A stretch of DNA of 64,000 bases from Octopus bimaculoides (taxonomy: Eukaryota), in assembly GCF_001194135.2 (NCBI RefSeq), contig NC_068983.1, positions 141,942,186-142,006,185 on the forward strand. The letters are read 5' to 3'. Shown here piece by piece: positions 5,077-27,792 of the stretch. The position numbers were made by a program, and so were the translations under genes. The notes beneath the pieces were generated by a model that was not told the DNA's origin, did no database searches, and was given only the letters and a program-made list of their open reading frames with translations. Each line of letters opens with the position of its first letter. Positions within the stretch are counted from its first letter, which is position 1.

Positions 5077-6024
5077 CTTACATGTGTGTGTGTGTGTGTG
5101 TGTGTCTGTTTACCCATCTCCCACAATATTAAGCTGCATTAAACAATTTGGTTCAATGGGTGAAGGTTTAGCATATTTATATCATATTTGCTCTTTCTTT
5201 TAATTTTTGTTAATTGCTACTGTCTGGATTTCATTTTGTTAGTTTCCCGCCTACCTAATTCTGTCAGAAAATGTTACCCTTAAGGCAGACATTGCCTGGG
5301 GATATTCTTATTTCAGTATTTCAGCTTCTTTACGTTGTGAGAAGCATAAAGTAGAAATAGTTTCAAGTCTTTTGAATCTGGGGACAACTATTTCACTTTG
5401 GTTGCTAATGTTCTTGAGGAAGCTATTTCTCTATTTCTGTAGATCCAAAGTAGTATGCACTAGATTGTTATCAGCCCTAACTGAGCAGACTTATGATCAA
5501 AAGAATTCTAGCCCTGATCATCCATTCTTTTTAATGATGTCCAAAATGCTGGTGAGATTTAGTTTCCCTTCCCCCTCCATTTCTTTTTAAAATATAATTT
5601 AGTCAAAGGAGGAGAGGTTAGAATCCATGACCGATTTGCTTGCACATCATCACAGATACGACTAATGTAATTGATACCTAGCCTGAACAACTACTGGTCA
5701 ATGACTGCAGGAAAAACACAGAAAGTATAAGATGACATTAAATCTGGAAACTTCACTGTGTCACAGTACCTCAACCCCATAGGCCACTTTTTACTAGATA
5801 TTTTATTTTGTTTTATATTTTTTTTCAATTTTTATTTATTTATTTATTTTTTTATTTTTTGTCATGCACATAACCATATTGCTCATGCTGGAGCACCACT
5901 GTACAGTACCAACACCTCAGGTGTCTGAATGTTTTGTTTTGTTTTGTTTTTTTGTCTTACATATATGCTTTAGTTTCTGGTAGGATCAGTATATTCTCAT
6001 TCTTTTTCTTTTCTTCTTTACCAG

Positions 6025-6117
6025 TTCCTCCTCCCTTAAAACAAAAACCTCCACCACCACCACCACCAAAGCCTGTAAGGTGTCCCCCTACGGCTGAACC
6101 TACTGATGATGTCTCAG
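6025..6117 (+). CDS. Coding exon E1, proline-rich: (V/F)PPPLKQKPPPPPPPKPVRCPPTAEPTDDVS
   Basis: Long polypyrimidine tract plus CCAG acceptor and GTATCT donor. 93 nt, phase 1-1, in frame with the downstream exons. Confidence 0.8.
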
Positions 6118-6499
6118 GTATCTTATAGTAGTAGCAGTAGTAGTACAAGCTAGTGTTTTTCCTCTTACACATACAATCTACTCCCTATATTTGAGACTGA
6201 ATGGGAGTGAAAATAACAAATAGTAAACAATACCATTTTACACAAGCACACACACACACACACACACACCAAGTCAAACAGCAATTTATTGTACTGCTTC
6301 TGGTTTCTTAGTATTCTTTGATATTTTTATTCCTCTTCCTTTCTTGACTTTTTTCCTTACCCTATCCTCACATCAACCCCCATCTCTAGTAGAAGTAGTG
6401 TTTGCTGTGTCTGTTGTTCCAGGCTCATTGTTTTCTGATCTCAAAAAATAGTATTTTCTGCTTTGGTCCTCCTTGCTTTCATCAATGTTTATATATATA

Positions 6500-6502
<3 letters not shown>

Positions 6503-6558
<56 letters not shown>
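6503..6558. repeat. (TA)n microsatellite
   Basis: Perfect dinucleotide run. Confidence 0.95.
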
Positions 6559-6561
<3 letters not shown>

Positions 6562-8934
6562 GGCGTGTGTTGTGTATATAATGTGTAGTTCTTTTTTCAT
6601 GTGTATTGCTTCTGTTTATCTTTTAATAATTTGATACCAACTTCTGAACCTGTCTCTGCTGACAGGTAATTTATTCCCCAACCCTTTTTTATTGTTTTGT
6701 TGTTGTTTTTTTTTTTTGTTTTGTTTTTTCCATCTTTTGGCTACTTTATTAAAGTGCCAATGATTCTGCTAAATTTCTGCAATAGGATTTCTAACTGAAA
6801 ATGGGGCATACAAAAAAATATGTATATCACAAAAACCAGCATTGTGTTTAACTAATAAACATTTCTCCCTTCTGCTTGTTATACTAGAAAAAAAAAATGA
6901 TTTCAGAAATTTAGATATTTTACATAATTTTAGTCATAGAATTAATTTCTCTATTCAAAAAAGAAAAGCAAAATGTATCTCCTGAATTTGTAACAAGCCA
7001 ATTTCTGGCTCACAATATTCCAATGGCAAAAATGTTAAGCTATTTCTGCACTTAGCCTTTGAAAGTTTGTATTGCAACAGCTGATATGTTGGGAATATTT
7101 CATATTGTGTGTGTATGTGACTGGGAAGAAATATCATTACTTAGTTGTTTTTTTTTTTGCGAAGCTTTTGACTCACTTTTCTTATTTGAGAAGGGAATGA
7201 ATGTGACAAAATGGAATATTTTGTGAATTTGTTGCATAATACCTCAAACTCTATTACTGTTGTTGTAAATACAATGTCTAAATTTGATAGATTCTATAAA
7301 CAGAATTTCCAGTCTCATTTGAGACTTCTCAATTGAGAATATCTTTAAAGATGTAATTTCCATTACTGATTTTAACAACTTCATTACTCTTTTGGAAAGG
7401 CGTGTGTCACACCTTTCTGCTGTTCAGTTCAACAATTCTGAACTTTGTAAAAGCCAAAACTCAGTTGATTACAATTATCCTCTCAGAATCAATAGTACAA
7501 AGTACCTTTCAAGCATTTGGGTTGACTTAGACAGTTTCCCTCCTTCACATTTGAGGACTTGCAGGGAAAGAATCTATACATATCACCTAAATACATTATA
7601 TCACTTATCTTTGTGTTACATTGTTTCAAATCCCAGTTATGTTATTTTTACATTTAAACTGATAGGGTGAGTAATATAAAAAGTATCGTACAAAAACCGA
7701 CTTTGTGTTTAGTCAACAAAAAGTATTAAGATATCAAAAATATTAAATACTTTGATACCCTTGTTACAAACTATTTACATATATGGTGCAGAATGAGATA
7801 TAATTGCTGTTATGATGGAATTATATATTTGATAGTCTTCTTCCCTTTTACCCCTACCATCACTCTTACCTAATGTTTTGCTGTTTGTTTCGCACAACCT
7901 CATATTAATTTTAATGTAACTAGAGATGATGATCAGAGAGATTTACAGCTTGAATGTTGATTTCTTGTTACTTGATGCTATTTTCAGTCCTGCCCTCTCT
8001 TTTCTATATTTCAATATTGATATTAGTACATTAGTGTGGGAGTCTACAAAGGTCAAGTTTTGCTGAGACACCAACTATTACCATTACTATGTACAAGAGT
8101 ATAGTGTTGGTACAGTTATGATGGTAAGCATAGTAATATTAATGTTGAAGCATATTCTGGTTCTTTAATGTTTTAGCTATCTTGGCTGAAGCCATGCTGT
8201 CATTCTATGTAAAATGAAGTAGAAGAAAAATTGTAATAGACATATTATAGTGGATTATACTATGTCTAAGAAATGTTTTTATGAGGTGAGGAAAATGTGC
8301 ATTAATGTTGAATATAGTTATGAGATTGGAGTGAAATCATTTAGTAGCAGGTCATTCCTGACTAATCAGATCTATAACTGAATGCATAATTATGGCTTTC
8401 CAGCTTTATCCCTATGTCTGAAAGGTATCAAGATGATTAATGTTGCACTAGATTCACTATAAAGGTCAATGTTAGCTGGAAAAGTGCTTGTAAAGGTGCT
8501 CAAAGATCATGTGTAATACATTTATTACTATTTAAGGATTGGGTGGTAGTGTTAAGTTTATGATCTCAAAGAGAATAATTGATTGGTACTGGTTATAATG
8601 AAAATTACTGGAAAATCTGTGATAATATGTTGAAGTATTAACACACTTCAACACAATCCAAATCTGTAATTTTTTTTTTCTTCCTTTACAATGTTTGTTA
8701 AAAAGATTTACTTTGGTATTTATTACATTTAAGACTATCAGCTCAATATGTTGATGCTTTTGCTTTTCCATAATTACCTCTACAATTTTTAGACTTATTT
8801 TGTGTTTTATTTAGGTGGAGGAAAAGCTTGCGCTTTCTAGCTTTGTTCCATATTTTGTTTTTGCTGTCTATCTCTCATTCAGTCTTCACCTCATTTTTTT
8901 CTAACCTCTTCATATCGTGTATCATATTCTACAG

Positions 8935-8990
8935 TACCATTAGCATCTACATACACACCCATATTATCTACCACCAAATCATACGTGTAA
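8935..8990 (+). CDS. Candidate alternative terminal exon VPLASTYTPILSTTKSYV*
   Basis: CTAAC branch-like site at 8901, acceptor TATCATATTCTACAG, phase-1 reading open to TAA at 8988-8990, AATAAA at 9103-9108. Confidence 0.35.
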
Positions 8991-10440
8991 CACTTATATA
9001 ATGCAGTAGAGGTGGCTATATTGCATATTCCTTCTGTGTACCCTGAATATCCGCATTGCATACATACTAGAAAATATACTCAGAAAGCATCTTGCTATTT
9101 AAAATAAAAGCATTCATATGTATAACTTTGTATCTTACCAGAACATATATGCCAAGACCATTCCACACTGATATGCTTCATTGAGCTTAAGCACTTAATA
9201 CTTTTCAGTTATAAACTTCAGTCAATGTCAAGCCACACCACTTACTAACTCCTATTTCAATTAACATTTCTCCAGATAATTCTACACCAATCATTTTTAT
9301 TTTACCATTATATACCAGATCATTCCAGTCAGTAATATTCCATTTCAGACTGCACTCAGCCACCATATTTCCAGACTATTTGCTTTTATTCCTACACTAC
9401 TTAACACCAGCCATTTCAAACTGTATTACTCCAGACCACTGTGGGCTGTTTTCCTTAACTCCCATATACATACATGAGACATGACACCACAATACACTCC
9501 AACTAGTTCATTTCTAAACATTCCCTGGTGATGTGAATGGGAGGTCTAATGGGCGACTTAAACATAAGTAATCCTTTTCCTCCTGCAGATTAATTTGCCA
9601 TGATTTTGCATGGGTGTCAGTTTCTGCTTAAAGCAATTTGTGTGGATTTTTAAAGCTTTTTTAAAACTGTATTCTTAGAGTCTGGGACTACCTACCTTCC
9701 TTGCCCTTTAACTCCTTTATACCAATTCTGTCAAACAAGGTTGTGATTGTACATTCTTTTTGCCTTTATTGAGGCATTTCATAATGATTGCTTAAACAGT
9801 TTCTAAAAACCCAACACTCATGTAATTTAAGCCTTATACTAGAAGTAGTTGTCTTTAGGATTTTTGTTTTCTATTGTCACTTGACAATTTTTCATTTCTT
9901 TTATAGTCATGCTGTTTTGTTTTGACTGTTTTATTTTGAAACAGCTTTATTTTTCGCTGTTGTCAGTTAATTTTTTATTTTACTTCATTTAAAGTTAATG
10001 AAGCAATTAGTTATGATTAAAAGCTTTTGACTCTATAGTCATGAGTTCAAACCCTACTACTTATCCATTATTGCAAGTTTCAGTTTACCTGGATGATAAA
10101 CCTGTTTCCCCTCATAACTTATAAGTTAGGTGGCTAGAGGTCAGAAGGGTGTCCTGTTTTGAAAATAATGTTGTAATGACTATATATGTAAATATTAGCA
10201 TCCATCAGCAGATGAGTGTTTAATGCTAAGACGCACCTTACCCACATTTGAATACCCAAGGGAGATGACTTTAATATTGCCTAGGCAAAATTCAGTCACT
10301 GGCTGTTTTTGTGAAGGTATAGCAAGAGGCTAAATTTCTTGAACCTAGTCTCATCACATCAGAATAGCCTTTTCAGTTTTCACTTTTGCTCCCTGACATG
10401 TCAACTTCTGTAGCCTCTTCATTCATTTGGAGAAATAAGA

Positions 10441-10491
<51 letters not shown>
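10441..10491. repeat. (CA)n microsatellite
   Basis: Near-perfect dinucleotide run. Confidence 0.95.
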
Positions 10492-10494
<3 letters not shown>

Positions 10495-11385
10495 TTGTGA
10501 TATTATGCTTTGGTAGCAAACTTGATTTAATCAGTACCACCATAACCTTCACACTCATCATGATTTTTCTTTAATTCCCTCACTTGTATCATATAATATC
10601 ACACCATACATACAACATTGAAACAACTTGTTACTTTATATGGGTGTTACTGCGATAGGATTTTTGAAATTCTAAGTTATAGTTCTTTGGTTTTTATGAG
10701 TCTATATTTTTATCACCAGTTACCACTTAGATTAATTTAGATCGTTTTTTGTGGCAAGTGGAGATCACTATTAGCACATTATATTGCTTAGTATTTCATT
10801 AACTCTTTAATGCTATAAATTCAATTTGTATTGTACAGTTAATTGCAATCAATAAATATTTTGTATTGTATAATTTGCTCTTGTTTTTGAGACATTATAT
10901 TAATTGGCTAAACTAATTTTAGCTCACCATTACCAAAAAACTCAAGCATTTTTATACAAAACTTTGTATCTCAATTTTTGTCATAAACCTTATACCACTT
11001 CCTATATAGTTTTCATGACCAATATAAAATGTTTTTAATTTTTAGATGCTCTCTGATCATATTTCATTTTACTAGATTCTTTAAATACTTAATCCCTTAT
11101 GATAAGCCACTTGTTGATTTCTAGAAATATATTTGAATTCCTTCAGAATTTTTTTCACCTACCATATAGTGTTTGTTTTTCACTGCTCTAAAAATCATTT
11201 GTTTATATATTGGGTTTCTATGGTCTGTGATAAAAGCACTTCAACAAAGATATTAATAAACTAATTGCCAGATTGAAATATTGGGGTTGATCTGATCAGC
11301 TAAACTCATGAAAGCAGTACTCTAATATAGTCACAGTCCAATGACTGAAACCTCTTCTAAAAGATTGTCAGTTTGCTTCTTTTAA

Positions 11386-11582
11386 CCCTTTAGCATTCAA
11401 ATTATTCTGTCAAATGGAATGCTTATTTATTCACATTGTTTGAATTTATCATATACTATCTTGTGGCTTTGAGATTTCAATTTTGTATATTTTTAGAATG
11501 ATTGTAGAGAGGCCAGATCTGACTGGTTTTAATACGAAACAGAATATTTGGACTGGATATGGCCAGTTTAAATGCTAAAGGG
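11386..11582. mobile_element. piggyBac-type MITE
   Basis: TTAA|CCCTTTAGCATTCAAA ... TTTAAATGCTAAAGGG|TTAA. 16-bp TIRs with one mismatch, CCC/GGG ends and an intact TTAA TSD. Confidence 0.85.
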
Positions 11583-12918
11583 TTAAAGTGTTAATTCTCA
11601 TTGAATACTTGCATGCATTTTTCTATTTATTTTTTTTATTTCCTGCATCAGTTTTACCTTTATTTTTTATGTATTTTTAAAGTTTGTCTATTTCTTCTTG
11701 TTTAAGAAATCATTCTTACAGGGATGTTTCCTGTTTTTCACTGTTTTCTATATTACCATGAATGGTATTGTATGCTATAGGTTCTGATTTTGTTGGAGAA
11801 ATTGTTGTCTTTTTCTTTTATTTAAGTTGGATGCACTTAACATTTAGCACCTATCTGAAACTGATGTGAAACTTTTCTAACAGGCAATGTGCCTTGCTAC
11901 AAGATGGAACACAGGGCATAGTAAGATTTAAACTCCTGTCTGTATTCATATTCTACTAAAATGTACACGATGTGTTTCTTAGTTCCTAGAGTTGAGAAGG
12001 CTCCTGGCAAGCGGAATTAACTGCATTTTAATTTCAGAGCATTATCAACATTCTCTCAAGAAAATCGTAATTATCTTAAAATATCTTTTGTGTATATAGA
12101 AATGGAAATTTATTTTTTAAAAACTGTAGACTGGGTAAGTTGGTACAATCCGTGAAGATCTTTTTGTTTGCATTTGTTAGCGTTGTACTACACATTTCAT
12201 AGTTTTGTAGTTGATTCTGACTTTTAATTTTCTTAGTCAATTGCTTAGCTTTATAGTAATGTTAGAAACTATTATTAAGGTAATGGGTGGCAGACTTGGT
12301 CAATAGTGATGAACAAAATTCCCTGGTGTATTTAATTACCTCTAGCTTCAAACTTCACTTTATATCTGGGTTTCATACTTTTGTCATTGATAAAAGAAGT
12401 TTTGATCTAATTAACTATAATCACTGATCAAAATGGAACAGAAATCCTAATTATTATTGCAAGTCTATTAGGTACCAGAATTAGTGTTGGAAAAATATAT
12501 GCCTTGAGTTTGTCATCAAAATCAGCTTTGCGTTTTATCCTTCCGAGATTGATTTAATCAAAAATACTTCTCACATAAAACGCATGGCCTTTTGATTATT
12601 ATATGTGAGAGGAGCTATAAAGTTGTGTAATATTTGAGGTACATTCAATTAAGTATACTCCTCTCTTACAAATGTAGTCTGGTGCTACTAAATAAGAATC
12701 ATTTATTATATAGGATTAAAAATCTTGCTTACAGCATTTCGTTTTATCTTTACTACTTCAATCTTATTAGTAGCTGATCCATTGATAAAATAGCTTATGG
12801 TAATATACTAGTGTTGAGTCAATTGATGATAGCCCTTTCGTCCTCCTTAAAGTGCCTTTTTACTGAGTGAAAACAAGTTCTTATGGGTGATATTAATGAT
12901 TTATACCGTTTTCTTTAG

Positions 12919-13095
12919 TGTCTCGTAAGAAACAGAAGAACCCACTACTGCGTCACAACTCTGAAGATGATGAAATGAGATTCTCTGGTCTCCATAGTAA
13001 GCGTGATATTCCGTCCAAGTCTTTTAAAATGTTGCAGAATTTAACTGTATCAGATAGTCAAGATGAAGTCTCATCACAAGACACTCAAGATGAAG
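12919..13095 (+). CDS. Coding exon E2: VSRKKQKNPLLRHNSEDDEMRFSGLHSKRDIPSKSFKMLQNLTVSDSQDEVSSQDTQDE
   Basis: TTTTCTTTAG acceptor and GTTAGT donor. 177 nt, phase 1-1, carries the IPSKSFKMLQ motif. Confidence 0.9.
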
Positions 13096-15393
13096 GTTAG
13101 TGTTAACTACATTTTTTCTTTTCCCTATCTCAGCCCATTCTCATCTTGATCATCGTCTTTTCAATTTTATCTCAGACCACATTTATATGTTCTATTCTTT
13201 AGTAAGGTTTTGAGGGAGAATTAGTTGCTATTTCTAGCAGACTGGAGGATCAATCTTGCTTCATTGGCTTGCCTACAATTTGTTGATACTGAGATAAGAA
13301 TAGGTTAAAATAATTTTGAATAAATTGCATTTTTTTAAGACTCTTTAACTGCACAAAGCAATTTCCATTTCTTTTAAATTAATCAGGTAAAGAGGGATAG
13401 GACAGATCACCATTGCCTGGTGGGATTGATGTTGCAAACTGCCCAGCCTGACATTGGCAGGAAAGAATGCACAAGGAGAGAATAATATGATTTGCTAACA
13501 ATAGTGAAAGCCTGATAATGACCCCTGGTACCATATGGTGGTGTTAAATCTCCTTTTCTTTCTTTAAAGCTGTTATCGGATCATTTGCAGCTTAATTGAT
13601 ATGGAATCAAATCGATTTGTAACTTTAGTTTAGGAATAGAAAAGAGTTATGTCCCTTTGAACAAAAATTTCTACGTACATTTATATTTGTCCATTCACAC
13701 GTTTGCTCACATTTACACTGTAGTATCCATTCACATAATCTCGTGCATATTCACCACTCTTGTAATCTAGAAATATTGATTAACGACCTTTTTACTTATT
13801 TACATAGAGGTTGATATTAATGAAGTAGAAAGACCAGATTGACCATAGATATGGAGAAAGTTCTAATCCAGTCTGGGATCGTGCAGAAAGTAAATAAAAC
13901 TTGATAACAGAAATCAGGCCAATTAAAATCTGGTTTAGATATATTGTAAATAAAAATTCTAAATATAAGATTAATAGTCTGGAAACTTATCGTAAGCCAT
14001 GATAAATTAAATTGCAACTAAGTGTCAAAGTCTTTCACAAAAACCAAAAAGCCTACATTTGTAAGGCCAGGTAATGGGATAAAATTCTTTTTAAGTGGTA
14101 GAGTGTAAGGTGAGGAGGCAAAAGTCGACTTGAGGAGAGATGGCTTGGTCTTAGCTGGCCATCATGCTTGGATATAGATAAGAATGATGAAAAGAACGGT
14201 TTTGCATTGATCATATAAATGTCTTCAAATACAAACCACGAGGGAGCTTCTGTGAAATCAATCAAATGGTTAGAAATCAAAGCCAAATATTTAAAATTTC
14301 ATTTCGCTACCATAAAGGAAAAACACATTGGATAATATACTCTCACTTAAATTTTGAACAAGACTGAATAATGATGACAGCAGAACCGTTTGATAGTAGA
14401 ATAGATGGATCAGAGTTGACATGAGAACTAAACAATAAATGACGTGAGAATTTCAACAAATGTCTCTTGGTTATTTTCTGCTGACATCCGTATATCTAAC
14501 ACATGACAATCATAGGAAGAAATGAAAAGAAAGTAAACTAGATGATTTGATAGTAACCTATGCCTACTAATAGTTCAAAGTTCCACTACATAGAGTGACA
14601 TTTACAACTCTGCATTCACCACATATGCTGTATTTGCAAAATAGTCACCATCACCTCATTGACAAATGTACAAACAATTTTTTTATATACATATGACTGG
14701 GTCAACATTGGAGCCTTTGTGTAAGTGCCCAACCTTCTAGAAACAGCACCCAAATCTCCCTCAAATGACATCATCCAGTCTTAAAAAGGAAGGACACATT
14801 GGACGAGATGGAGGGAGGGAGGGAGAGGATACAATAAATTCTAATTTTATGTAATTTCGTAAGTTGTAACTGAAAGCATGTAATGCTTGTAATACACATA
14901 GCTTCTGGATTCACAAAATGTTCTAAGACTTTTGTTGCTGTGGTTGTCCCATCAGAAATTTAGTGTTACAGTTTAAGTTAATGGCAGAATGGCTTCAACT
15001 TAATGTGGCCTGAGATTTAAAACTTTTGCAAAGAATTTGGCCACAAGAACTGTGCTTAAAACAAAGCTTAGTAGAGCAATTTGCATTCCATCCCATTTCA
15101 AAAATGCTGCTCCACTGGAACTAGCATTTATTTAATGCTTTCGTAGAATGAATAAATTTATGTACTTATCCATAGGTCTGGTTTTACTGATATTTGAACA
15201 CCCTTAAACTGTCATAATACATCAGCAATCGCATTCTTTTTTAGGTAATATTTGTCTAAAGTATTACTTCTTCTTATAAAATTTTTATTGATCCTTTTTA
15301 TTAATTTATATTAATTATATTACTATCTTAGAACCTTTTGAATTTATGAATTATTAAATTTCTATTTTTTTTCATTTTCTTCTCTCATTTCAG

Positions 15394-15507
15394 ATGGTGT
15401 TGGTAATTATTGTGAAGCATCGATCCGATATAAAGGAAAGCACATTCCATCACCATCTTTCCGTGTCTTGCAGAACTGGGCAGATACAGATACTGACCCA
15501 ACTCCAG
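15394..15507 (+). CDS. Coding exon E3: DGVGNYCEASIRYKGKHIPSPSFRVLQNWADTDTDPTP
   Basis: Strong polypyrimidine tract plus TTTCAG acceptor and GTAAGT donor. 114 nt, phase 1-1, one motif copy. Not in the ORF track because it is too short. Confidence 0.92.
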
Positions 15508-18500: not shown

Positions 18501-20095
18501 AAGAGAAGCATCTTCTTTTAAAGAATACTTATTGATTTTTACTTAATGTCCTTTTACTTGCCTGGAAAATTGCAAAGTGGATTTTGTTTTTATTGATAAG
18601 GTATTTTGTTGAGATTTATTAGTTTTACATTCTTGTTATTTAAATCCATATATAGTCTTTTCTGTTTTCAGTTATAGCCTGGAGCCATGCTTAAGTACCA
18701 CCTTCAAGCATTTGAATCATATTAACTTGTGCTTATTTCAGTCTAATAATTATTTTAATGATATTTCTTCATCAAATTATTAAGTCAATTTTTAAACAAA
18801 GGGTTGCATAATGTGCATATTGTGTACATGCATATAGATGTTGGGCTTCTGCAGTTTCCATCTACCAAATTTTATTCCCATGACACAAGTCAACCCAAGG
18901 TTATTATAGCAAAAGATACTTACCCAAGGTGTCATGCAGTAGGAACAGACTGTTAACATTATTGCAAAGTGAACTTCTCTAGCCATAGCATAACTATAAA
19001 GTGTTTAGTCATGCTTAAAAGAACTTAAATTCCAAATTGGGAAAGTTTCTACATTGTTCTCAATTGCTGATTCACATCATTATCCCAGATGGTTGAAGAA
19101 TGGCATTTGTGGCAAAGTAATCAATACCACAAACGAAGAAGAAAACAAAGCTCTCATCAGACCAACAAAGAATCCCCTATGTGGTCACTCAAGCTGCTAG
19201 AAATAGCAACCAATTTTTTTCCAAGTACACCTTATCTTAAAGAAATAACATTGGACATTCTTAGATAAACAAGTGAGGTGATGACTGATGGAGCACATTT
19301 AATTATAAGTCTGCTCGATTATTGATCTATTTCATAATTTAATTCAATCTTTTATTGCTTATTGATTTCACACAGTTGGCAGATGAAGGATATTTTATGT
19401 CATGTTTATACCTCTTACACTCTATACCTATCTGCAACTAACCACACCCATTTCTAACATGTGTACCATAAGAAATCTGTTTCATTCACTTTTCCTTTTT
19501 GGACTGTGACTAGCCAATAATTAATGGGGAAAATATTTTTAATGGTGATCACTCTATAAGACTAATTTAAATAATATACAGAAAGTCTGTGCTGGATCAT
19601 ATATTTGTTTATTTTTCAAATTTAGAATGTAAACCATTCAATCCTCAGTTAACCAACAAATTATATACTCACAAATACACACTCATCATACATGCAAATC
19701 TACATGTATATACATACGTATGTGTATATAATTTATGTTCATGGAAACGCTTATAAAATGTTTTTACCAATGCATGAAAGTTGTTTATTAATCACTGTTC
19801 CGTTTCTGAATGCCACAAACTTTTTTTTATCAATAACAATGATTACTTAAAACTATTGAAAAGTTTTTTTTTCTTAACATCCTCTCAAGATTTCCAAGAA
19901 TTTGGAACCTCTTTACTCTATTACTTCTATAACACAAAAATACTAAATCCCAACAATGTAACGTTCAACTTGTCAAACTTAGACAAAGTAAACAGATTCT
20001 AACCAATCAACAACTCAGTTTTGTACTAAAGAAATCTAGTAAAAAAAAGTTAGTTAATTTTTTTTTTTTAATTAATTGATCAAAATACCATTTAG

Positions 20096-20239
20096 ATTCT
20101 GGCTTGGATACTGAAGAAGAAACTGTAGGCAACTCTGTTATGAATACTTCAATCCGCTATACAGGCAAATGCATTCCATCCCCAACATTCCAGGTATTGA
20201 AAGCTTGGGCTGACAAAGATGTACTCCCTAGTCCTAAAA
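20096..20239 (+). CDS. Coding exon E4: DSGLDTEEETVGNSVMNTSIRYTGKCIPSPTFQVLKAWADKDVLPSPK
   Basis: TTTAG acceptor and GTAAGT donor. 144 nt, phase 1-1, clearly paralogous to E3. Confidence 0.9.
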
Positions 20240-20777
20240 GTAAGTGATGCAACTGAACAATATGCAATATTCTAACACCATATTATTGATGAATTTCAGA
20301 GAATCTGAATCTCTCTTTCTGTCACTCTTTCTCTCTGAGATGTTGAATATTTCCACTCTGTGCACATGTGTGTATGCTTTTGTTCTGAGAAAGTGCTTTT
20401 AACTTTATACATCTTACTCCACCTATCTGTCAGGATTAGGTATTGGATCTTTTAGTAATATGATGGCAGTCCCATCTAGAGGAAGATTTCCCTTTCCCCT
20501 TGTTACCACCTTAAAAAAGGACGGGCATTACCAGTGATACTTTACAAGGGTCCTGAGATTAGTGGAAGGAAGGGAGCTAATGATCTATAGATAAAGTATT
20601 TGGCCCAAATGCTTGCAACAGAGAGGGGTTTGTTAGTCCTCAAGACCAGGTTGTAGGAGATAAACTGGGCAATGAATTATGTTTACTCAGCGATGTAACA
20701 AGCAAAATTATGGTGGCAGTTTATTACATTTTTTTCTTTGACGTTTTGCACCCAAAATTTTAATCCTTCTTACTGCA

Positions 20778-20940
20778 GGTACAAGGCTTGAAATTTTGTA
20801 GGAGTTAGTTGGTTGCACTAACCCTATGCTCAACTGGTACTTAATTTATCAACCTCAAAGGAATGAAAGGCAAAGTCAGCCGAAGTAGGATTTGAACTAA
20901 GAATGTCAAGACAGACAAAATGCTTTTAAGCATCCTGTCC
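20778..20940 (-). mobile_element. SINE (same family as 39277-39736)
   Basis: AAGGCAAAGTCAGCCGAAGTAGGATTTGAACTAAGAATG..AGACAGACAAAATGC matches the reverse complement of the copies at 39.3 and 39.5 kb. Confidence 0.7.
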
Positions 20941-21373
20941 AAATTGTTTGACTGCAGACGTCATTTGCTGTACAATCTGTTAAGCTTACAGGTGTCTTGT
21001 TAAAAGGAAATAGATAGTGATTGCAGATATATCTTTAAAAATGAGCTAACAGAAATTGCCAAATGACAATCCAAATGAGCGCCTTGTGAGAAGGGGAGAT
21101 AATCTTGAGAATCAAATTCTCTAATGTTGACATGCCATAATATAGAGGACCAGTTTATTGTCTGGAGATAAAAGGACAGTTGTGATTATTTTTCTACCCT
21201 AATAACCATCAGTATGACAAGTATCTTACCTTTTCTTCAAGAAACTTGGACATACACAAAAAAGAGCAGAACACGTCTATTGTTCAAGTACATGCACTAG
21301 CCATCCTGAATTGTTTTTCTTAGCTCATTCTTGTTTAAAATTATATATTTTACATAAGCTGTAAATGTGTACT

Positions 21374-21411
<38 letters not shown>

Positions 21412-24400
21412 TATGCTACTAGAACTAGTGCAGGACACAATTGTTGTGCTGATGATGTTTACAGAAGCAGAAACATATTCGCAGTTGTTGCCTCCAGACA
21501 AACTTGTCCTTTTCCTTTGTGGATTTTCAACATTGGAGATTGATTCTTGAGATTATCTCCTCTTTTCTTATGGAGCTGGTCTTAATTGCCATTTAAGAAT
21601 TATGACACATTCTCTAAAAGCAGAGATAATTTAAATAAATAAATTGGTGTATATTTAACATACCTGTATTTATCTATGTGCACACATATCTATGTACATA
21701 CACATAGATGCATATGCACATATACATCTGTCTGTGTGCATGTGTGTGCGCATCTGTATGGATATCATTTTGTTGTTTTTTTTTAAGTTTTAAGTTGTAG
21801 TTTCGTGTAGCTTTGTCTAAATACTTCGTTTAGGAAAGTCTAAGTTTCTAATTTGTACCACACAGATTGTGTTTTCTTACTGAAGTTATAAATTTTTTTC
21901 TAACCTGATTCTTTTTGTAACATGATTTTTGTCCATCTGCTGTGACTAGGTTATTTGTCATCCATCACAGCAGGATGCACTTCAAACTTTTCGAATTGAA
22001 GCCATAAAGCTAGCAATTAAGTCAATATGATTGTCGTTGGCATTCAAAGCCAGACTATTGAAGTTTTAACTGAAGTAAAAAAAAATTTTTTTTAAATCAC
22101 ATTTGTAACAGCTTTAAGACATTTTTTTGTAGTGTTTGTAGTTTTTAACCTACTGATAGATGATATTAATTCACTTATAACATGAAAAGCTAGATATTAT
22201 TGGAGAAGAGAAGACAGCATATTGAGCAATGAGTCATAGACAATATCATCGATCCTTGTGATACTCAAAATAACCTAAAGTTGAAATATAAAATAAAAAT
22301 ATCAGAGCAGAAGGAAATATGCTGTTAAGTCTGGCTGCATCTTAAGGATAAATGGAAGAATAGGGAAAACAAAAGGAATTGAATTTCAGATCAATGTGAA
22401 AACATTGATAAAGTAACGAAAATAGTCAATAACAAGCTAAATGTTGCATGGTTGTTATACTGAGGAAGTCCACAATCCAGGACTGCATATATTAAACCTT
22501 TTCAATAGCTTAGCCAGAAGAAGGGCAGTGCCTATATTTTTCAGGTCCTCTGAGACTATTGGAAGGGTACAAGTTATATTTAAACCTAACCCAAATGCTT
22601 GCAACAGAGTAAACTCCACTAAATGTACTCACTGTACTTTGGGCTAAGTGGTGGTAAACTGGCAATGGATTAAGTTTACCATCCAAAACTTGTGTAACCA
22701 CTGTTGAAAATTCTGCTATTAACTCTAAGATATCAGCATACTAAACAACGCTATAAATCTGCCATGTGTGGACTCTTTATTCTTTTACTGGTTCTTGTCA
22801 TCAAACTGTGGCAAGTGGCCCTGAGGGGGCACCTCCTTCAATTCAGGAAGGAAATGGAAATTACCATAGGCACCTTTCTTTCCCCTGACCCTGTTGAAGT
22901 ATTTCTGTTTGAGAGCATTTTCAAAGTAACAAGTGCTTCTCATCCATTGTTTTGTTCAATAATTATGGTTTTAACTTGGTATTCACAAGTCTATCAGAGA
23001 TTTTCGCTATATCTTGTGATCAGTTGAAAATCAGTTTCATAAGAAGCTATGGAGTTGAACATACCTGCAAATAAGTGGCTAGTTTATCCTTAAATCAGCC
23101 TGAATATATTAGCCTATGGTTAAGTGTTCCAGTTGTAACTACCTAATTTTCTACTCATTGTTTTTGGGTCTTCATTTTCTAATGTCCTGCATTGTTCTAA
23201 GATGATAGGGTGCATAATTCTAAAAAGGCTTGGGTTCTATTACTTAAAAGGTTATTTCATCAATTCCTCAGTGAAGCTTTTAGTCAGAAAAAATAAAGGT
23301 CTCGGTAAAATCTGAAGCTAATGTGTTAGGTGATGCTAGAAGTGGGGAAAAATTCAAAATGTCTTGGGACTACATGTCAGTAACAATCAACATAATTGTT
23401 GGCACCCACTGATAGTATTGATGAGGTTGCAGTTGATGCTATAAATTAAAACATATTGCATCTGTAACAGCTACAAGGCATTTATATAAAGAATGTTTGC
23501 AGTCCTCCACCTACTGATGGAGGACATTAATTTACAAACATAAGATGTTGCTTTTTAAGGACAGACATAGCTGGCTATAATTATCTGTAACAGCTTTTTT
23601 AGTTAAAAGGCATTGCTGCTTGTTTCTGCAACATGTACAATACTTAGACACTAACTGATTTAAAGTTCAGGCATTTAAATAGGAATTCTTTGAGGTTTTG
23701 AGAAAATCTCTAACAAAGAATGTGAAACTAAGTTTGTTAATTTTTATTATCATTCTTGCAAGAAAACTGATATTTCTTGAAATAGTTAAGTGACACAAGC
23801 TGTAATAGCATTGCATTTCATAACTTTGCTCAAACCTCTTTGACAAAAGCTAGTTAAAGTAGAGTCACAGGTCATCCCTGTCTGCACAGATCTATGATCA
23901 GTGTCATTGCCATCTCATAACATATCTAAAACTGCATTATCCAATATATCCTTCTCTCCTTTTTAGTTTGATTTGAGGGAGATTTGCCAGATATTTCTTG
24001 TAGGCAACATAACCACGTGGAAGCATTATTGGTTAAAAATTATGATGGAACTTGATTGCTTAGGTATCAATTAAAATCTCTCAATGACTAACAATAACTT
24101 GGTTAAATTATAATTAAATAAGTGATTTGTAATATTTCACACTGAAGAATCCAGATATTTGTGATATTGCCAGATTTTATTTCCATAATTGATTTAGTGC
24201 CTACTGTCCATAATTCTTTTTATAACATAGTTTGAATTATTTCAGTAATTGAATTCACTAAAAGTGATTTATATTCAATTTTATACATATCTAAAGTTGG
24301 TTATGTAATGAACAAACTATTTGTAATAAGCATCTTTCTTTAAAATTAGCCCAAGAAGGTGTACATAGTAAAATTTATACCCAAATTGAAGTGACTAAAG

Positions 24401-24727
24401 TGATATTATATTACTGTTAAGTTTGAATTTTAAGATGGGAAAACTCAAGCATGGAGTTCTATATAATTATTAAATTACTCATTTCCTGTTTTAAATTAGT
24501 ACTTTGTTCAGTTTAAATAATGGCATATTGTTTATTGAACAAAATGTTGGTTAGGAAGTTCCAAGTAGATGCACTTTGGATGAAGAAAGACTGATAAAAA
24601 TGTTAGTAAAGGATTCAGAAACATTGGGGCAATTGATAAGCTAGGTAATGCATTTAGTTGAAAGAGCAGAAGCCATTGTAGTAGTGGTAAAAATAAAATA
24701 TGGAAAATGTGACAGTCTCAACTTTCA

Positions 24728-24728
24728 G

Positions 24729-24802
<74 letters not shown>
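24728..24802. repeat. Compound (TG)n(TA)n microsatellite
   Basis: Seen directly in the sequence. Confidence 0.95.
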
Positions 24803-24806
<4 letters not shown>

Positions 24807-25409
24807 CAAAAAATAACATGGCGGTTTTTCAGCAAAATCTTTTCTGGTTTAGTCTTCTCATGGCAGATAAGTTTTTGGAATCTACAAAATATTGGTAAAC
24901 CCCATTTTGGTGGGACATGTCAGTAAGAAAATAAAGGTACAATGCTACAAAGGAAAAAAAAAACTATCCTGTGGGGTTTGAACTTTAAGGTATTTGTTAC
25001 ATTTTTGTTGCTTTTCTTTGATATTCTAAGGTCTTTTTCTGATGAGTGGATTTGTAGTCTTCATAAAAACTTCTTGGAATGAGAAATCGCTGTGCCTTCT
25101 GGCAGTGTTCTTATTTGTTCTTGATATAACTCTAATATCCTGCACCAATAAGTATGTTGTGAACCCTGATACGCACACTATAATCAACAATTATTTTATT
25201 TCCTTCCACAAGTTTTCTTGATTGTACATTCTTACCCAAGTTGCTTCTTTACATTTTTTTTTTAAAGTTTTTCAGAGAAAGAAAATATAAAAGGAAAAGA
25301 GTAATTTGAAAGAGAAAAAGGAATATTCATGGGTATTGTTTGTTGACCTATGATCAGGTTTTAAATTGTACATTTTGTTTATTAGAAACCTTCTGTTGTC
25401 TTCGTTTAG

Positions 25410-25574
25410 TGAGGAAATCTAGATCAAAACCCAAACGCCCACCAATAGAGGAGGATGAGGACAAAAGTGATGGTCCAGTAGAAGTACGATACTCGGGTGG
25501 TAATATCCCTTCACGTGTCTTCAAAGTACTACAAATGAGTGTTGGAGGATCAGATCCTATTGAACCAACAAGCA
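25410..25574 (+). CDS. Coding exon E5: (M/V)RKSRSKPKRPPIEEDEDKSDGPVEVRYSGGNIPSRVFKVLQMSVGGSDPIEPTS
   Basis: TTCGTTTAG acceptor and GTAAGT donor. 165 nt, phase 1-1, motif RYSGGNIPSRVFKVLQ. Confidence 0.92.
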
Positions 25575-25632
25575 GTAAGTATTTAAAGTTTATTATTTGG
25601 TATACACTGTTTTTAATATTACCTTAACTATA

Positions 25633-25847
25633 TGAGGGGGTCCTGAAAAGTTCCTGGGTTTGGGTAAAAGAAAATACAGGAGGATCAGTTGATTAGGATT
25701 TTATTCAACACATTCCCCTCTGATTCACGCACTTATTGCAGCAGTCCTTCAGTTTTTCTAAGCCCTGTAAAAGAACTCAGAAGGTTGAGCCTCAAACCAG
25801 GCTTTTTGCAATACCCTTAAAGCCAGAAACTTTGCAGTGTCCCCTTG
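25633..25847. mobile_element. Mariner-type MITE
   Basis: TA|TGAGGGGGTCCTGAAAAGTTCCTGG ... CCAGAAACTTTGCAGTGTCCCCTTG|TA. Imperfect mariner-like TIRs, TA TSD, no ORF. Confidence 0.75.
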
Positions 25848-26881
25848 TATGTTATGTATGATGACGTTTTCATAAGTTATTCGTTTATAGAAATATAAGA
25901 CCTATTAGAAATATTTTTCATTGGTAAAACATCTGTTCATTGCTTAATTTAAGAATTAGACAAAATCAAAACTGCTCCATCTTTTAGCTGGCATTGGTAA
26001 TTTGGCAAGTTTTTTTTAATAAAGTAGATTTAACACAAATATCTGAATTCAGCACTACAAGGCAATGAAATTCTCATCAGTTCTACAGTGTGTTACCATT
26101 CCTTTTTATCAATAAATATCCACCCACTAGTAATTTTAAACTTAATGTAGGACTTTTATCACTAAGGGTTGGTGCCCTCAACACAGAAGGCAGTAAAATA
26201 GAAAGGATGGATAGGCTAAACAAACCTCAAAGGCCTTTGTTGTTCAGCTCCAGGTCAGCCTGAATATCAAATATGTGCCTTTTTGGAGACAATAAGTTTA
26301 TTTGGTAGAGATTTGGCTCCAGCAGGACAAGTGGTCATGTGCATGCTCTTTCATGGATTCATTTGTTGTTGAAAAATGACTGTGTAGCCTAATAATGGAC
26401 AACCAAAGACATTTTATGTATTTGGGGAACGCATTTAATTTTGCAGGACCCAGCTTAACTTTTGAGATATCCATGTCATCTCTAGAATATTATCTATAAT
26501 AAATTGGTTTCTCACCAAAGAGAATGACATAAGTACCTGGTTTAGCTGGCATGAAAGCTGAGCCAAATCTAGTCCTTAAAAGCCTTTTGAAGCTTGAAAT
26601 ATTGACTTGTTTAGATTCAAAATAGAAATGAGATACTACTGCATATATGGATGAATGTGGTCACTTGGTACACTATTTGTCATTAAAGTATATTGAAACT
26701 TCGTCTAAAATCTCTCACTATGGTCTTAAAATTAAGTTTTCTGACTACTGCTTTAAACTTGATTTCTGTGTCATGATGTTATGGTTTTCTTGTAGAGGGT
26801 GGTAATTCAACAATTACAGCTTGAAAGACTAATCTTTGATTAATCATGTTTCTGATTATTTTCTCTTTATATCCGCTACAG

Positions 26882-27000
26882 GTGAAAACCCAAGTGAAGA
26901 TGAGGACAGATCAACAAAGTCTTTACCACGCCAGTCTCGGTCTATGAGAGTCATCCAGAAAGCTAAAGTACCAGAAGATTCTGGTTGCACAGATTTCTAA
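26882..27000 (+). CDS. Terminal coding exon E6: SENPSEDEDRSTKSLPRQSRSMRVIQKAKVPEDSGCTDF*
   Basis: CTAATC branch-like site, pyrimidine tract and CTACAG acceptor. Phase-1 frame ends at TAA 26998-27000. PRQSRSMRVIQ resembles the PDLIM linker motif PRQSxSFRVLQ, and the C-terminal T-D-F is class I PDZ-ligand-like. Confidence 0.9.
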
Positions 27001-27223
27001 CCTTGAGTTGCTATGTAGGAACTAGATTTCAATCTTTCTATGTCTAATTATTATTATTTATCTTAAAAAAAAAAAAATTAAAATGGGTAAAAAAATATTT
27101 GCATTTTTCACTGTTTGAAATTACTTTCGACTCCTTTACTTTGAACTTTTGGGCTTGCATTCTTCTTTATTAAACATTTTCCTTTTCTCTCTCTCTCTCT
27201 CATGCACGCATGTGTGCACACGC

Positions 27224-27265
<42 letters not shown>

Positions 27266-27786
27266 TAAGCTGCTTCCCAGCTAAATAGGAAGTTAGCATT
27301 TGTGTGCCCTGTGACAGTCTTCTACCCATTATTCTACTTTTTGAGGCAGTACCCTTCCTGTTGTCAATCCTTTTAGTAACTTCTTGCAACACAAAAACAG
27401 AGCATATATTTTTAAAGCCAGGATACATGTGCACACAATGTATGTGTACGTATAAATGAAATGTTATAATTTTTTTAACATACTAAAACCTAACAATGAC
27501 CAGGATGAGATCACATTAAATCCAAAGCCAGCCCAGCAGTGCCTTTTAAAATTTTTTTTAAGTATAAGGAGTAAATTTACCATTGTTAGGAACGGAAACG
27601 TGCCTATCACCCAACTAGTTGTGTGATAGGNNNNNNNNNNTTACCATTGTTAGGAACGGAACCGTGCCTATCACCCAACTAGTTGTGTGATAGGAATCTT
27701 GGATTTACTTTGAACTATTGAGCAGTTAAAGTTTTGATCTTCGATTCTTGGAATGTTAACCATTGCTTTCTTTAGAAAGGATAAAA

Positions 27787-27792
27787 AATAAA
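27787..27792 (+). promoter_or_regulatory. Candidate polyadenylation signal AATAAA
   Basis: A canonical hexamer downstream of the stop. Other AATAAA occur at 28320 and near 28665, so the real site is uncertain. Confidence 0.25.

What the first reader, a model, noticed from the sequence alone, without database searches (positions are those of the whole stretch)
6025..27000. One-motif-per-exon protein built from symmetric phase-1 cassettes (RYxGxxIPSxxFxxLQ repeats)
Seen: E1-E5 are multiples of 3 with phase 1-1 boundaries. E2-E6 each carry one motif copy: RFSG....DIPSKSFKMLQ, RYKGKHIPSPSFRVLQ, RYTGKCIPSPTFQVLK, RYSGGNIPSRVFKVLQ and PRQSRSMRVIQ. Acidic or proline-rich spacers separate them, and the protein ends in TDF. 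Established: an SxSFxxLQ motif occurs in the PDZ-LIM linker (DUF4749 region) of Zasp/PDLIM proteins. From memory and unverified, YTGxxIPSRSFKxLQ motifs occur in uncharacterised arthropod proteins such as Drosophila CG43897 homologues. Inference: a poorly characterised disordered scaffold, possibly of the muscle Z-disc, whose number of binding motifs can be tuned by exon skipping. No folded domain is visible in the window.
Basis: partly seen in the sequence, partly recalled or inferred. Interest (0 to 1): 0.7.

Follow-up and report, generated by a model that had tools for sequence, protein, structure and literature searches.

The report
Octopus Zasp-like scaffold gene, modular exons
This is the last six coding exons of an already annotated octopus gene for a disordered protein related to Zasp/PDLIM (a family of muscle Z-disc scaffold proteins); each exon carries one copy of a short helical motif, one motif exon and a proline-rich exon are optional, and the protein family is conserved across protostomes but has hardly been studied.

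Summary
Six + strand exons (6025-6117, 12919-13095, 15394-15507, 20096-20239, 25410-25574, 26882-27000) join in frame. The first five are multiples of 3 with phase-1 borders. E2-E5 each carry one RYxGxxIPSxxFxxLQ-type motif, E6 carries a degenerate copy, and the protein ends in TDF.

The window is Octopus bimaculoides. The exons are identical to five UniProt isoforms named "Zasp-like motif domain-containing protein" (426-494 aa). These isoforms differ by inclusion of E1, of E4, and of a 20-aa exon upstream of the window. E1 and E4 are fully conserved in O. vulgaris, while introns are about 90% identical.

The N-terminal ~235 aa lie upstream of the window and hold a full DUF4749/ZM domain. The window motifs are extra copies of that domain's C-terminal block.

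Orthologues occur in molluscs, arthropods, tardigrades, priapulids and rotifers. Each motif copy has its own conserved signature, and the tail is [ST]D[FYLM]. Long isoforms in other species start with a PDLIM-type PDZ domain, and none has a LIM domain. AlphaFold2 predicts disorder with a short helix on each motif.

Most likely this is a multivalent cytoskeletal adaptor whose valency is set by splicing. The Z-disc role and orthology to Drosophila CG43897 remain untested.

The parts
6025..6117 (+). E1: optional cassette exon, 93 nt, phase 1-1, encoding VPPPLKQKPPPPPPPKPVRCPPTAEPTDDVS. It is polyproline and carries no IPS motif.
   Evidence: Splice sites were read directly. The exon is present only in the 477-aa isoform A0A0L8GTF2. 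In O. vulgaris it is identical apart from one in-frame 3-nt insertion, while the flanking introns are 84-90% identical.
12919..13095 (+). E2: constitutive exon, 177 nt, phase 1-1. It carries motif copy M1 (EDDEMRFSGLHSKRDIPSKSFKMLQ; motif at 12978-13037).
   Evidence: It is 100% identical to all isoforms and 177/177 identical to O. vulgaris. The M1 signature is conserved from molluscs to ticks.
15394..15507 (+). E3: constitutive exon, 114 nt, phase 1-1. It carries motif copy M2 (VGNYCEASIRYKGKHIPSPSFRVLQNWA; motif at 15426-15473).
   Evidence: It is 113/114 identical to O. vulgaris. AF2 predicts a helix on PSFRVLQNWA.
20096..20239 (+). E4: optional cassette exon, 144 nt, phase 1-1. It is an old duplicate of E3 and carries motif copy M2' (SIRYTGKCIPSPTFQVLKAWA; motif at 20155-20202).
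   Evidence: It is present together with E3 in the 474- and 494-aa isoforms and absent from the other three. It is 144/144 identical to O. vulgaris, against about 89-90% in the flanking introns. Against E3, pS is 0.71 and dN/dS is 0.12.
25410..25574 (+). E5: constitutive exon, 165 nt, phase 1-1. It has a basic and acidic spacer plus motif copy M3 (VRYSGGNIPSRVFKVLQ; motif at 25487-25534).
   Evidence: The acceptor at 25410 is fixed by the annotated junctions PTP|VRKSR and SPK|MRKSR. It is 163/165 identical to O. vulgaris.
26882..27000 (+). E6: terminal coding exon. It carries a degenerate motif (PRQSRSMRVIQ; 26935-26958), the C-terminal TDF, and the TAA stop at 26998-27000.
   Evidence: The [ST]D[FYLM] C-terminus is shared by most family members with short tails.
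27001..29057 (+). Probable 3' UTR of the same gene. This is inferred, and its end is not defined.
   Evidence: It follows the stop codon directly. Window 27641-29057 is 95.4% identical to O. vulgaris, and 28158-28600 is at least 98% identical, against a locus mean of 91%. No transcript evidence was available.

Best explanation
Region 6025-27000 holds the six 3'-terminal coding exons of an annotated O. bimaculoides gene. The gene encodes a LIM-less relative of the ALP/Enigma (PDLIM/Zasp) scaffold proteins.

The full protein is 426-494 aa. It has a ZM motif and a complete DUF4749 domain, both encoded upstream of the window. Three or four extra copies of the C-terminal block of that domain follow (consensus R-Y-x-G-x-x-I-P-S-x-x-F-x-x-L-Q). 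Then come one degenerate copy and a C-terminal TDF.

Each copy sits in its own phase-1 symmetric exon, so any of these exons can be left out without breaking the frame. In practice the polyproline exon E1 and the duplicated motif exon E4 are the alternative cassettes.

Proposed mechanism (inferred). The protein is an intrinsically disordered, multivalent adaptor of actin-anchoring structures in muscle.
- Each motif is a short amphipathic helix that folds on binding a partner. The candidate partners are those known for ZM/DUF4749 regions elsewhere: the LIM domains of Zasp-type proteins and the alpha-actinin rod.
- The T-D-F carboxy terminus is a ligand for a PDLIM-type PDZ domain, either that of Zasp or that of the gene's own long isoforms.
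- Splicing sets the number of binding helices (E4) and adds a polyproline site (E1), which changes how many partners one molecule can bridge.
For: Shown here:
- Exon anatomy and reading frame.
- Identity to five UniProt isoforms that differ by E1, by E4 and by an upstream 20-aa exon.
- Purifying selection on the optional exons. Between O. bimaculoides and O. vulgaris, E4 is 144/144 identical and E1 is 93/93 plus an in-frame codon. Flanking introns are about 84-96% identical, and zero mismatches in 144 nt would have a probability of about 3e-7 at 10% divergence.
- E4 is an old duplicate of E3 kept under constraint (dN/dS 0.12).
- PF15936 scores 67.3 bits over residues 112-229 of the full protein, and the window motifs align to HMM positions 66-91.
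- Orthologues with the same order of copy-specific motifs occur in cephalopods, gastropods, bivalves, chelicerates, myriapods, insects, a tardigrade, a priapulid and rotifers.
- The [ST]D[FMYL] tail is found in 51 of the 85 retrieved proteins that have at least two motifs and fewer than 80 residues after the last one.
- Long isoforms in bivalves, gastropods, aphids and rotifers begin with a PDZ domain.
- The Mytilus PDZ matches all seven PDLIM/ZASP PDZ structures at 48-62 bits. The next best PDZ scores 31 bits.
- That PDZ carries the P-W-G-F-R loop, which is described as unique to PDLIM PDZ domains (preprint 10.1101/2021.07.29.454387).
- AF2 predicts disorder, with helices exactly on ZM and on motif copies M0, M1, M2 and M3, in both the octopus and the mussel protein.

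From the literature:
- The ZM/PF15936 region of Drosophila Zasp proteins binds Zasp LIM domains and targets ZM-only isoforms to the Z-disc (PMC6910826).
- The unfolded ALP internal region binds the alpha-actinin rod (PMC2670261).
- PDLIM PDZ domains bind [ST]xPhi and [ED]xPhi C-termini such as ESDL.
Against: - No binding, localisation or expression data exist for the octopus protein.
- It is not known which part of DUF4749 contacts LIM domains or alpha-actinin. The published alpha-actinin contact maps to the ZM motif proper, not to the SFxxLQ block that is repeated here.
- AF2 did not place the mussel C-terminal tail on the PDZ domain with any confidence (tail pLDDT below 50).
- Whether the octopus gene has PDZ exons is unknown, because the region upstream of the window was not available.
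- Only one motif exon (E4) is documented as optional in octopus.
- I could not check that the UniProt isoforms rest on transcripts rather than on prediction.
Confidence: 0.6

Rival explanations
1. The gene and anatomy are as described, but the protein is a general cytoskeletal or signalling adaptor used mainly outside the sarcomere, for example in neurons or epithelia. Under this reading the motifs are docking or phosphorylation-regulated sites rather than Z-disc valency units.
For: The isolated DUF4749 region of vertebrate Pdlim5 drives dendritic branching in neurons (PMC11312917). The spacers hold basophilic and acidic serine contexts, such as RHNSEDDE, which is read directly from the sequence. 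No expression data tie the octopus gene to muscle.
Against: The relatives with any data point to muscle. Mytilus PDCP-1, a probable orthologue, is expressed most highly in adductor muscle, foot and mantle, and it binds actin (PMC7573561). ZM-only Zasp isoforms localise to Z-discs (PMC6910826).
Confidence: 0.2
2. E3 and E4 are a mutually exclusive exon pair, as tandem duplicated exons often are. Splicing would then swap motif variants rather than change motif number.
For: E4 is a tandem duplicate of E3 with the same phase.
Against: The annotated 474- and 494-aa isoforms contain E3 followed by E4, and no isoform has E4 without E3. The two exons differ in length, and joining both keeps the frame.
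Confidence: 0.04
3. The protein is a secreted or extracellular biomineralisation factor, as was proposed for Mytilus PDCP-1 found in shell matrix.
For: Recombinant PDCP-1 altered calcium carbonate crystallisation, and the native protein was found in the myostracum shell layer (PMC7573561).
Against: The retrieved sequences show no obvious signal peptide, but this was judged by eye only and no predictor was run. The domains (PDZ, ZM) are cytoplasmic cytoskeletal modules. The family is present in arthropods, tardigrades and rotifers, which lack shells. Octopus has no external shell. That PDCP-1 is the same gene is itself unverified.
Confidence: 0.03

Closest known systems
ALP/Enigma (PDLIM1-7, ZASP/LDB3; Drosophila Zasp52) PDZ-ZM-LIM proteins
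   Same: The octopus protein has a ZM motif (FVHGQYNSPLGLYS) and a full DUF4749 domain including SEVYKL...KQSLSFKVLQ. Orthologues carry a PDZ domain that best matches all seven PDLIM PDZ structures and has the PWGFR loop. The linker is disordered and the genes are heavily alternatively spliced.
   Different: There is no LIM domain in the protein, in the 37 kb downstream of the stop codon, or in any family member examined. The C-terminal block of DUF4749 is multiplied into 3-5 exon-encoded copies preceded by an RYxGxxIPS extension. The protein ends in a PDZ-ligand-like [ST]D[FYLM] tail instead of LIM domains.
Drosophila Zasp66 / Zasp67 (LIM-less PDZ+ZM proteins; ZM-only 'blocking' isoforms)
   Same: They are LIM-less, and alternative transcripts either include or omit the PDZ domain (PMC3591300). 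ZM-only isoforms reach the Z-disc by binding Zasp52 LIM domains and limit Z-disc growth (PMC6910826). This is the best working analogy for the short octopus isoforms.
   Different: From memory, and not checked here, Zasp66 and Zasp67 are described as insect-specific paralogues. The octopus family has its own insect orthologues (Tribolium TC006684, Anopheles sinensis ZHAS_00005299) with a KPFTYTPGG N-terminal motif and IPSRSF repeats. Orthology to Zasp66/67 was not tested.
Mytilus coruscus PDCP-1 (PDZ-domain-containing-protein-1, GenBank AKS48171.1)
   Same: [quoted passage not shown] It is expressed most highly in adductor muscle, foot and mantle, and it binds actin with a Kd of about 0.78 uM (PMC7573561). 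The Mytilus trossulus orthologue of the octopus gene (P0027) has the same layout, with its ZM motif at residue 490.
   Different: PDCP-1 is 595 aa, so it would end before the IPSxSFxxLQ repeats. It was interpreted as a shell matrix protein.
Drosophila CG43897
   Same: It is reported to accumulate at the Z-disc (PMC12898291) and to be alternatively spliced in a muscle-splicing mutant study (bioRxiv 10.1101/2025.04.20.649734).
   Different: No CG43897 sequence could be retrieved, so orthology is untested. The insect orthologues seen are much longer (1300-2300 aa) and have a large C-terminal extension that octopus lacks.

Membership tests
ALP/Enigma (PDLIM/Zasp) family | N-terminal PDLIM-type PDZ domain (PWGF carboxylate-binding loop) | tested here: inconclusive
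   It is absent from the five annotated octopus isoforms and from the window, and the genomic region further upstream was not available. It is present in orthologues from Mytilus, Pinctada, Plakobranchus, Patella, aphids and rotifers (Pfam PF00595 at 34-51 bits; taxa). The best PDB matches are all PDLIM/ZASP PDZ domains.
ALP/Enigma (PDLIM/Zasp) family | Zasp-like motif / DUF4749 (PF15936) region | tested here: met
   The full protein P0017 scores 67.3 bits against the gathering cutoff of 28.7, over residues 112-229. That domain lies upstream of the window. The window peptale alone scores 22.6 bits, below the cutoff.
ALP/Enigma (PDLIM/Zasp) family | One or more C-terminal LIM domains | tested here: not met
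   The protein ends in TDF at 26997. Pfam finds no LIM domain in the octopus, cuttlefish, mussel, snail, aphid, rotifer or beetle members. No LIM-like zinc-finger pattern occurs in any frame of the window.
Unnamed protostome family: (PDZ)-KPFxY-ZM-DUF4749-(IPSxSFxxLQ)n-[ST]D[FYLM] | Ordered, copy-specific motifs M0 (QSxSFKVLQxMTDTE), M1 (EDDEMRFSGL...IPSKxF), M2 (IRYKGxxIPSPSFRVLQ) and M3 (YxGGxIPSRxFKxLQ) | tested here: met
   All four are present in this order in the octopus protein, and they align column by column with gastropod, bivalve, tick, scorpion, spider, millipede and tardigrade proteins. The profile search gives E = 3.9e-94 for the octopus protein and 584 representatives at E <= 1e-3.
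Unnamed protostome family: (PDZ)-KPFxY-ZM-DUF4749-(IPSxSFxxLQ)n-[ST]D[FYLM] | C-terminal [ST]-D-[FYLM]-COOH | tested here: met
   The octopus protein ends in CTDF. The tails TDF, SDF, TDM, TDY, SDL and SDM account for 50 of the 85 short-tailed members retrieved.
Unnamed protostome family: (PDZ)-KPFxY-ZM-DUF4749-(IPSxSFxxLQ)n-[ST]D[FYLM] | N-terminal PDxLxNTMxK...KPFxYxPGGxDLSEI motif | tested here: inconclusive
   It is absent from the five O. bimaculoides isoforms, which start with MMRNEAHPF. It is present in a cuttlefish transcript isoform (P0020) and in gastropods, chelicerates and insects. An alternative first exon in octopus is likely but was not seen.
Orthologue of Drosophila CG43897 | Reciprocal sequence similarity to the CG43897 protein | not testable with these tools
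   No D. melanogaster sequence was returned by the three protein searches. The closest dipteran hits are Anopheles and Megaselia proteins.
Mytilus PDCP-1 | Sequence identity of PDCP-1 (AKS48171.1) to the Mytilus orthologue of this gene | not testable with these tools
   The PDCP-1 sequence is held only as a figure. Only the PDZ and ZM coordinates and the amino-acid composition can be compared.

The most novel reading that the evidence does not exclude
The family may be a self-assembling, valency-tunable linker.
- The PDLIM-type PDZ domain of long isoforms binds the alpha-actinin-like [ST]D[FYLM] tail of other molecules, head to tail.
- The exon-encoded helices each capture a LIM domain of Zasp-type proteins, or an alpha-actinin rod.
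- PDZ-less short isoforms, such as the five annotated in octopus, would act as chain terminators.
- Inclusion of E4 would add one more cross-link per molecule.

This would extend the 'growing versus blocking isoform' rule for Z-disc size (PMC6910826) to a second gene family that is ancient across protostomes. It would also give a handle on how the obliquely striated muscle of cephalopods sets the size of its Z-elements.
Probability: 0.12. Interest if true: 0.6.

Novelty: new variant of a known kind. Interest (0 to 1): 0.38.

Why it matters
ZM/DUF4749 regions are conserved in every bilaterian Z-disc scaffold, yet their binding function is still poorly defined.

This family carries the C-terminal block of that domain as a clean tandem array of short helices. 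Each copy has a signature conserved from rotifers to insects and molluscs, and each sits in its own frame-neutral exon. That makes it a natural dissection of the domain. The repeated 16-residue unit can be tested directly as a peptide against LIM domains, alpha-actinin and PDZ domains.

For cephalopod biology, it identifies a candidate structural component of arm and mantle muscle whose composition is set by splicing.

For genome annotation, it shows that many family members carry misleading automatic names, such as SNF2L2, YLP motif-containing protein, nucleolar phosphoprotein and IF-2-like. It is not a new kind of system, and the gene and its isoforms are already in public databases.

Tried and rejected
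1. I looked in the window for the annotated N-terminal exons and the 20-aa exon. None is there. They lie upstream, as the O. vulgaris locus confirms.

2. I tried to see E1 and E4 in a second cephalopod genomic contig (L001, from an ENA assembly). The contig reaches only E2 and E3, and a weak "LKQTPPPP" match proved to be simple sequence.

3. E3/E4 as mutually exclusive exons: rejected, because isoforms contain both.

4. Hidden or decayed further motif exons in the introns: none. The next best HMM hit scores 7.8 bits.

5. LIM exons downstream of the stop codon: none.

6. A solved structure for the motif region: the profile against PDB sequences found nothing at E <= 1.

7. AF2 on the mussel full-length protein, to see whether the tail docks on its own PDZ domain: the tail stays at low confidence, so the test is uninformative. 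I did not run a fold search, because the models are disordered outside the PDZ domain.

8. I tried to reach D. melanogaster CG43897 with an insect-only profile. It returned mosquito, planthopper, cricket and phorid fly fragments but no named D. melanogaster protein.

9. Other blocks that are highly conserved against O. vulgaris (341-597, 5165-5333, 11910-12128) were checked for coding capacity. All frames have stops.

10. Pfam scans of six stray ORFs elsewhere in the window gave nothing.

Full report
**1. The observation**

The window is AT-rich (about 30-40% GC) metazoan sequence with microsatellites and assembly gaps.
- 12978-13037
- 15426-15473
- 20155-20202
- 25487-25534
- 26935-26958, a degenerate SRSMRVIQ

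Each motif lies in a short open stretch bounded by a polypyrimidine-AG acceptor and a GT donor. The exons are:

| Exon | Coordinates | Length |
|---|---|---|
| E1 | 6025-6117 | 93 nt |
| E2 | 12919-13095 | 177 nt |
| E3 | 15394-15507 | 114 nt |
| E4 | 20096-20239 | 144 nt |
| E5 | 25410-25574 | 165 nt |
| E6 | 26882-27000 | 119 nt, with TAA |

E1-E5 are multiples of three and all borders are phase 1. Joined together, the exons give one open 270-aa peptide that ends in TDF.

Chance does not explain this.
- The core pattern occurs 4 times, against a mean of 0.06 in 200 shuffles.
- A motif HMM scores E2-E5 at 44-54 bits, and nothing else in the window scores above 7.8 bits.

**2. What the locus is**

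The peptide matches Octopus bimaculoides UniProt entries named "Zasp-like motif domain-containing protein". The shared exons are 100% identical, so the window is O. bimaculoides DNA.

Five isoforms are on record:

| Length | 20-aa exon | E1 | E4 |
|---|---|---|---|
| 426 aa | no | no | no |
| 446 aa | yes | no | no |
| 477 aa | yes | yes | no |
| 474 aa | no | no | yes |
| 494 aa | yes | no | yes |

E1 (polyproline) and E4 are therefore annotated cassette exons. E2, E3, E5 and E6 are in every isoform.

The first ~235 residues and the 20-aa exon are not in the window. The window starts inside an intron.

**3. Conservation of the optional exons**

The O. vulgaris locus (L003, OX597816.1) is collinear with window 1-37476 at 91% mean identity.

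| Exon | Identity to O. vulgaris |
|---|---|
| E1 | 93/93, plus one in-frame codon |
| E2 | 177/177 |
| E3 | 113/114 |
| E4 | 144/144 |
| E5 | 163/165 |
| E6 | 115/119 |

The flanking 300-nt intron pieces are 84-96% identical. At 10% divergence, a 144-nt stretch without a single change has a probability of about 3e-7.

E4 is a tandem duplicate of E3. Similarity between them is confined to a 72-nt core at 71% identity, and there is none in the introns. Synonymous sites are near saturation (pS 0.71) and dN/dS is 0.12. The duplicate is therefore old and has been kept under protein-level selection.

In O. vulgaris the upstream exons are also visible:
- ZM exon: L003 2969-3325
- a short exon: L003 5147-5206
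- DUF4749 exon: L003 9825-10057
- 20-aa exon: L003 13277-13336

**4. Domain content**

Pfam finds DUF4749 (PF15936) at 67.3 bits over residues 112-229 of the full protein, and no other domain. That stretch holds two elements typical of PDLIM linkers:
- the classical ZM motif (FVHGQYNSPLGLYS)
- the SEVYKL...KQSLSFKVLQ element

The window peptide alone reaches 22.6 bits, below the cutoff, and aligns to HMM positions 70-91. The repeated unit is therefore a multiplied C-terminal block of DUF4749, extended on its N-terminal side by RYxGxxIPS.

AlphaFold2, run with a 24-sequence alignment, gives a mean pLDDT of 48.9. It places short helices only on these elements:
- the ZM motif (126-136)
- the SEVYK helix (173-198)
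- M0 (211-220)
- M1 (289-299)
- M2 (335-344)
- M3 (436-445)

**5. The family**

Word-indexed and exhaustive profile searches recover orthologues widely, with 584 representatives at E <= 1e-3. The taxa are:
- Cephalopods: cuttlefish
- Gastropods: Biomphalaria, Physella, Elysia, Plakobranchus, Patella, Candidula
- Bivalves: Mytilus, Pinctada
- Chelicerates: ticks, spiders, scorpion, horseshoe crab
- Myriapods: a millipede and a centipede
- Insects: Tribolium, weevils, mosquitoes, aphids, cricket, planthopper
- A crayfish, a barnacle, a tardigrade, a priapulid and rotifers

In the alignments each motif copy keeps its own signature across phyla:
- M0: QSxSFKVLQxMTDTE
- M1: EDDEMRFSGL..IPSKxF
- M2: IRYKGxxIPSPSFRVLQ
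- M3: YxGGxIPSRSFKxLQ

The array is therefore ancient and is not a recent expansion. Only E4 (in Octopus) and the degenerate E6 copy (in cephalopods) are lineage additions.

Genomic ORF fragments from other molluscs and from insects each contain exactly one motif flanked by non-coding sequence. One motif per exon is therefore also old.

The tail [ST]D[FYLM] is shared by most short-tailed members.

Long isoforms in bivalves, gastropods, aphids and rotifers begin with a PDZ domain, and none has a LIM domain.
- The mussel PDZ domain folds at pLDDT 97.
- It matches all seven PDLIM/ZASP PDZ structures at 48-62 bits, with the next best PDZ at 31 bits.
- It has the PWGFR loop, which a structural study calls unique to PDLIM PDZ domains (10.1101/2021.07.29.454387).

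The window itself holds no LIM-like pattern in any frame.

**6. Mechanism**

What is inferred: the protein is a multivalent adaptor of actin-anchoring structures. The inference rests on published work with related regions.
- The ZM/PF15936 region of fly Zasp proteins binds Zasp LIM domains. It brings ZM-only "blocking" isoforms to the Z-disc and so sets Z-disc size (PMC6910826).
- The unfolded ALP internal region binds the alpha-actinin rod (PMC2670261).
- PDLIM PDZ domains bind [ST]xPhi and [ED]xPhi C-termini such as ESDL.
- Zasp66 likewise makes transcripts with and without its PDZ domain (PMC3591300).

On this reading, E4 inclusion adds one binding helix and E1 adds a polyproline site.

Weak points:
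- The published alpha-actinin contact maps to the ZM motif proper, not to the block repeated here.
- AF2 gives no confident tail-PDZ docking.
- No octopus expression or localisation data were available.

**7. Comparison with known proteins**

The closest characterised relatives are:
- PDLIM/Zasp52, which have LIM domains
- Zasp66 and Zasp67, which are LIM-less
- Probably Mytilus coruscus PDCP-1, a PDZ+ZM protein that is richest in adductor muscle, foot and mantle and binds actin (PMC7573561). Its PDZ and ZM coordinates fit the Mytilus orthologue, but its sequence could not be compared.

The insect orthologues found here do carry KKYTGSSIPSRSFKILQ, but no D. melanogaster sequence was retrieved. 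That link remains a lead and not a result.

**8. Verdict**

What is new:
- the repeats are copies of the C-terminal block of DUF4749
- the architecture, the per-exon modularity and the tail are conserved across protostomes
- the family belongs with the PDLIM/Zasp PDZ proteins while lacking LIM domains
- the optional exons are under strong constraint

Interest is moderate.

Noticed in passing
window 341-597, 5165-5333, 11910-12128: These intronic blocks of 170-260 nt are about 99% identical to O. vulgaris, against a locus mean of 91%. They are as conserved as the exons, but every frame has stops. They may be splicing or transcriptional regulatory elements. The last block lies about 800 nt upstream of E2.
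   Followed up: partly
window 6070-6080 (inside E1): A second consensus-like donor (AAGCCT|gtaagg) lies after base 6075. Using it would give a 51-nt version of E1 that still preserves phase and ends just after the polyproline run. No isoform on record uses it.
   Followed up: no
window 27641-29057: The stretch after the stop codon is 95.4% identical to O. vulgaris, and 28158-28600 is at least 98% identical. It is probably a conserved 3' UTR.
   Followed up: partly
window 42361-42911, 51256-51355, 55928-56241, 58605-59246 (and 10-N runs at 27631, 45278, 58311): These are assembly gaps (runs of N). ORFs starting at 57883 and at 58448 begin with the same 52 residues on either side of a gap, which suggests a duplicated repeat or an assembly artefact.
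   Followed up: no
window 37500-64000: No convincing coding exon or LIM-like pattern was seen downstream of the gene. Six stray ORFs, including 56809-57120 and 1700-1897(-), had no Pfam match. From memory only, these two look like retroelement and mariner remnants.
   Followed up: partly
P0009 vs P0005 (Biomphalaria glabrata); P0192 vs P0102/P0111 (mosquitoes): A snail isoform skips the M1 motif exon. Mosquito transcripts end either in a short ...GPGETDF tail or continue into a C-terminal extension of more than 1000 aa. Splicing therefore changes motif number and the tail in other phyla too.
   Followed up: partly
family members in public databases: Several orthologues carry misleading automatic names: 'nucleolar and coiled-body phosphoprotein 1-like' (Physella), 'YLP motif-containing protein 1-like' (Mytilus), 'global transcription activator SNF2L2' (Adelges), 'translation initiation factor IF-2-like' (Pollicipes) and 'extensin-like' (Varroa).
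   Followed up: no
Drosophila melanogaster 3L (literature, PMC9709637): Zasp67 (PDZ+ZM), CG32052 and CG43897 lie next to each other around the Ilp1-5 cluster. In aphids, rotifers and molluscs, the PDZ domain and the IPSxSF module are in one protein. Whether the fly genes are pieces of one ancestral gene was not tested.
   Followed up: no
L003 1-9950 (O. vulgaris OX597816.1): The O. vulgaris annotation splits this gene. A 749-aa model ends just upstream of the 228-aa model (CAI9720125.1) that covers the 20-aa exon through E6 and omits E1 and E4. The 749-aa model may hold the missing N-terminal exons, possibly including a PDZ domain.
   Followed up: no
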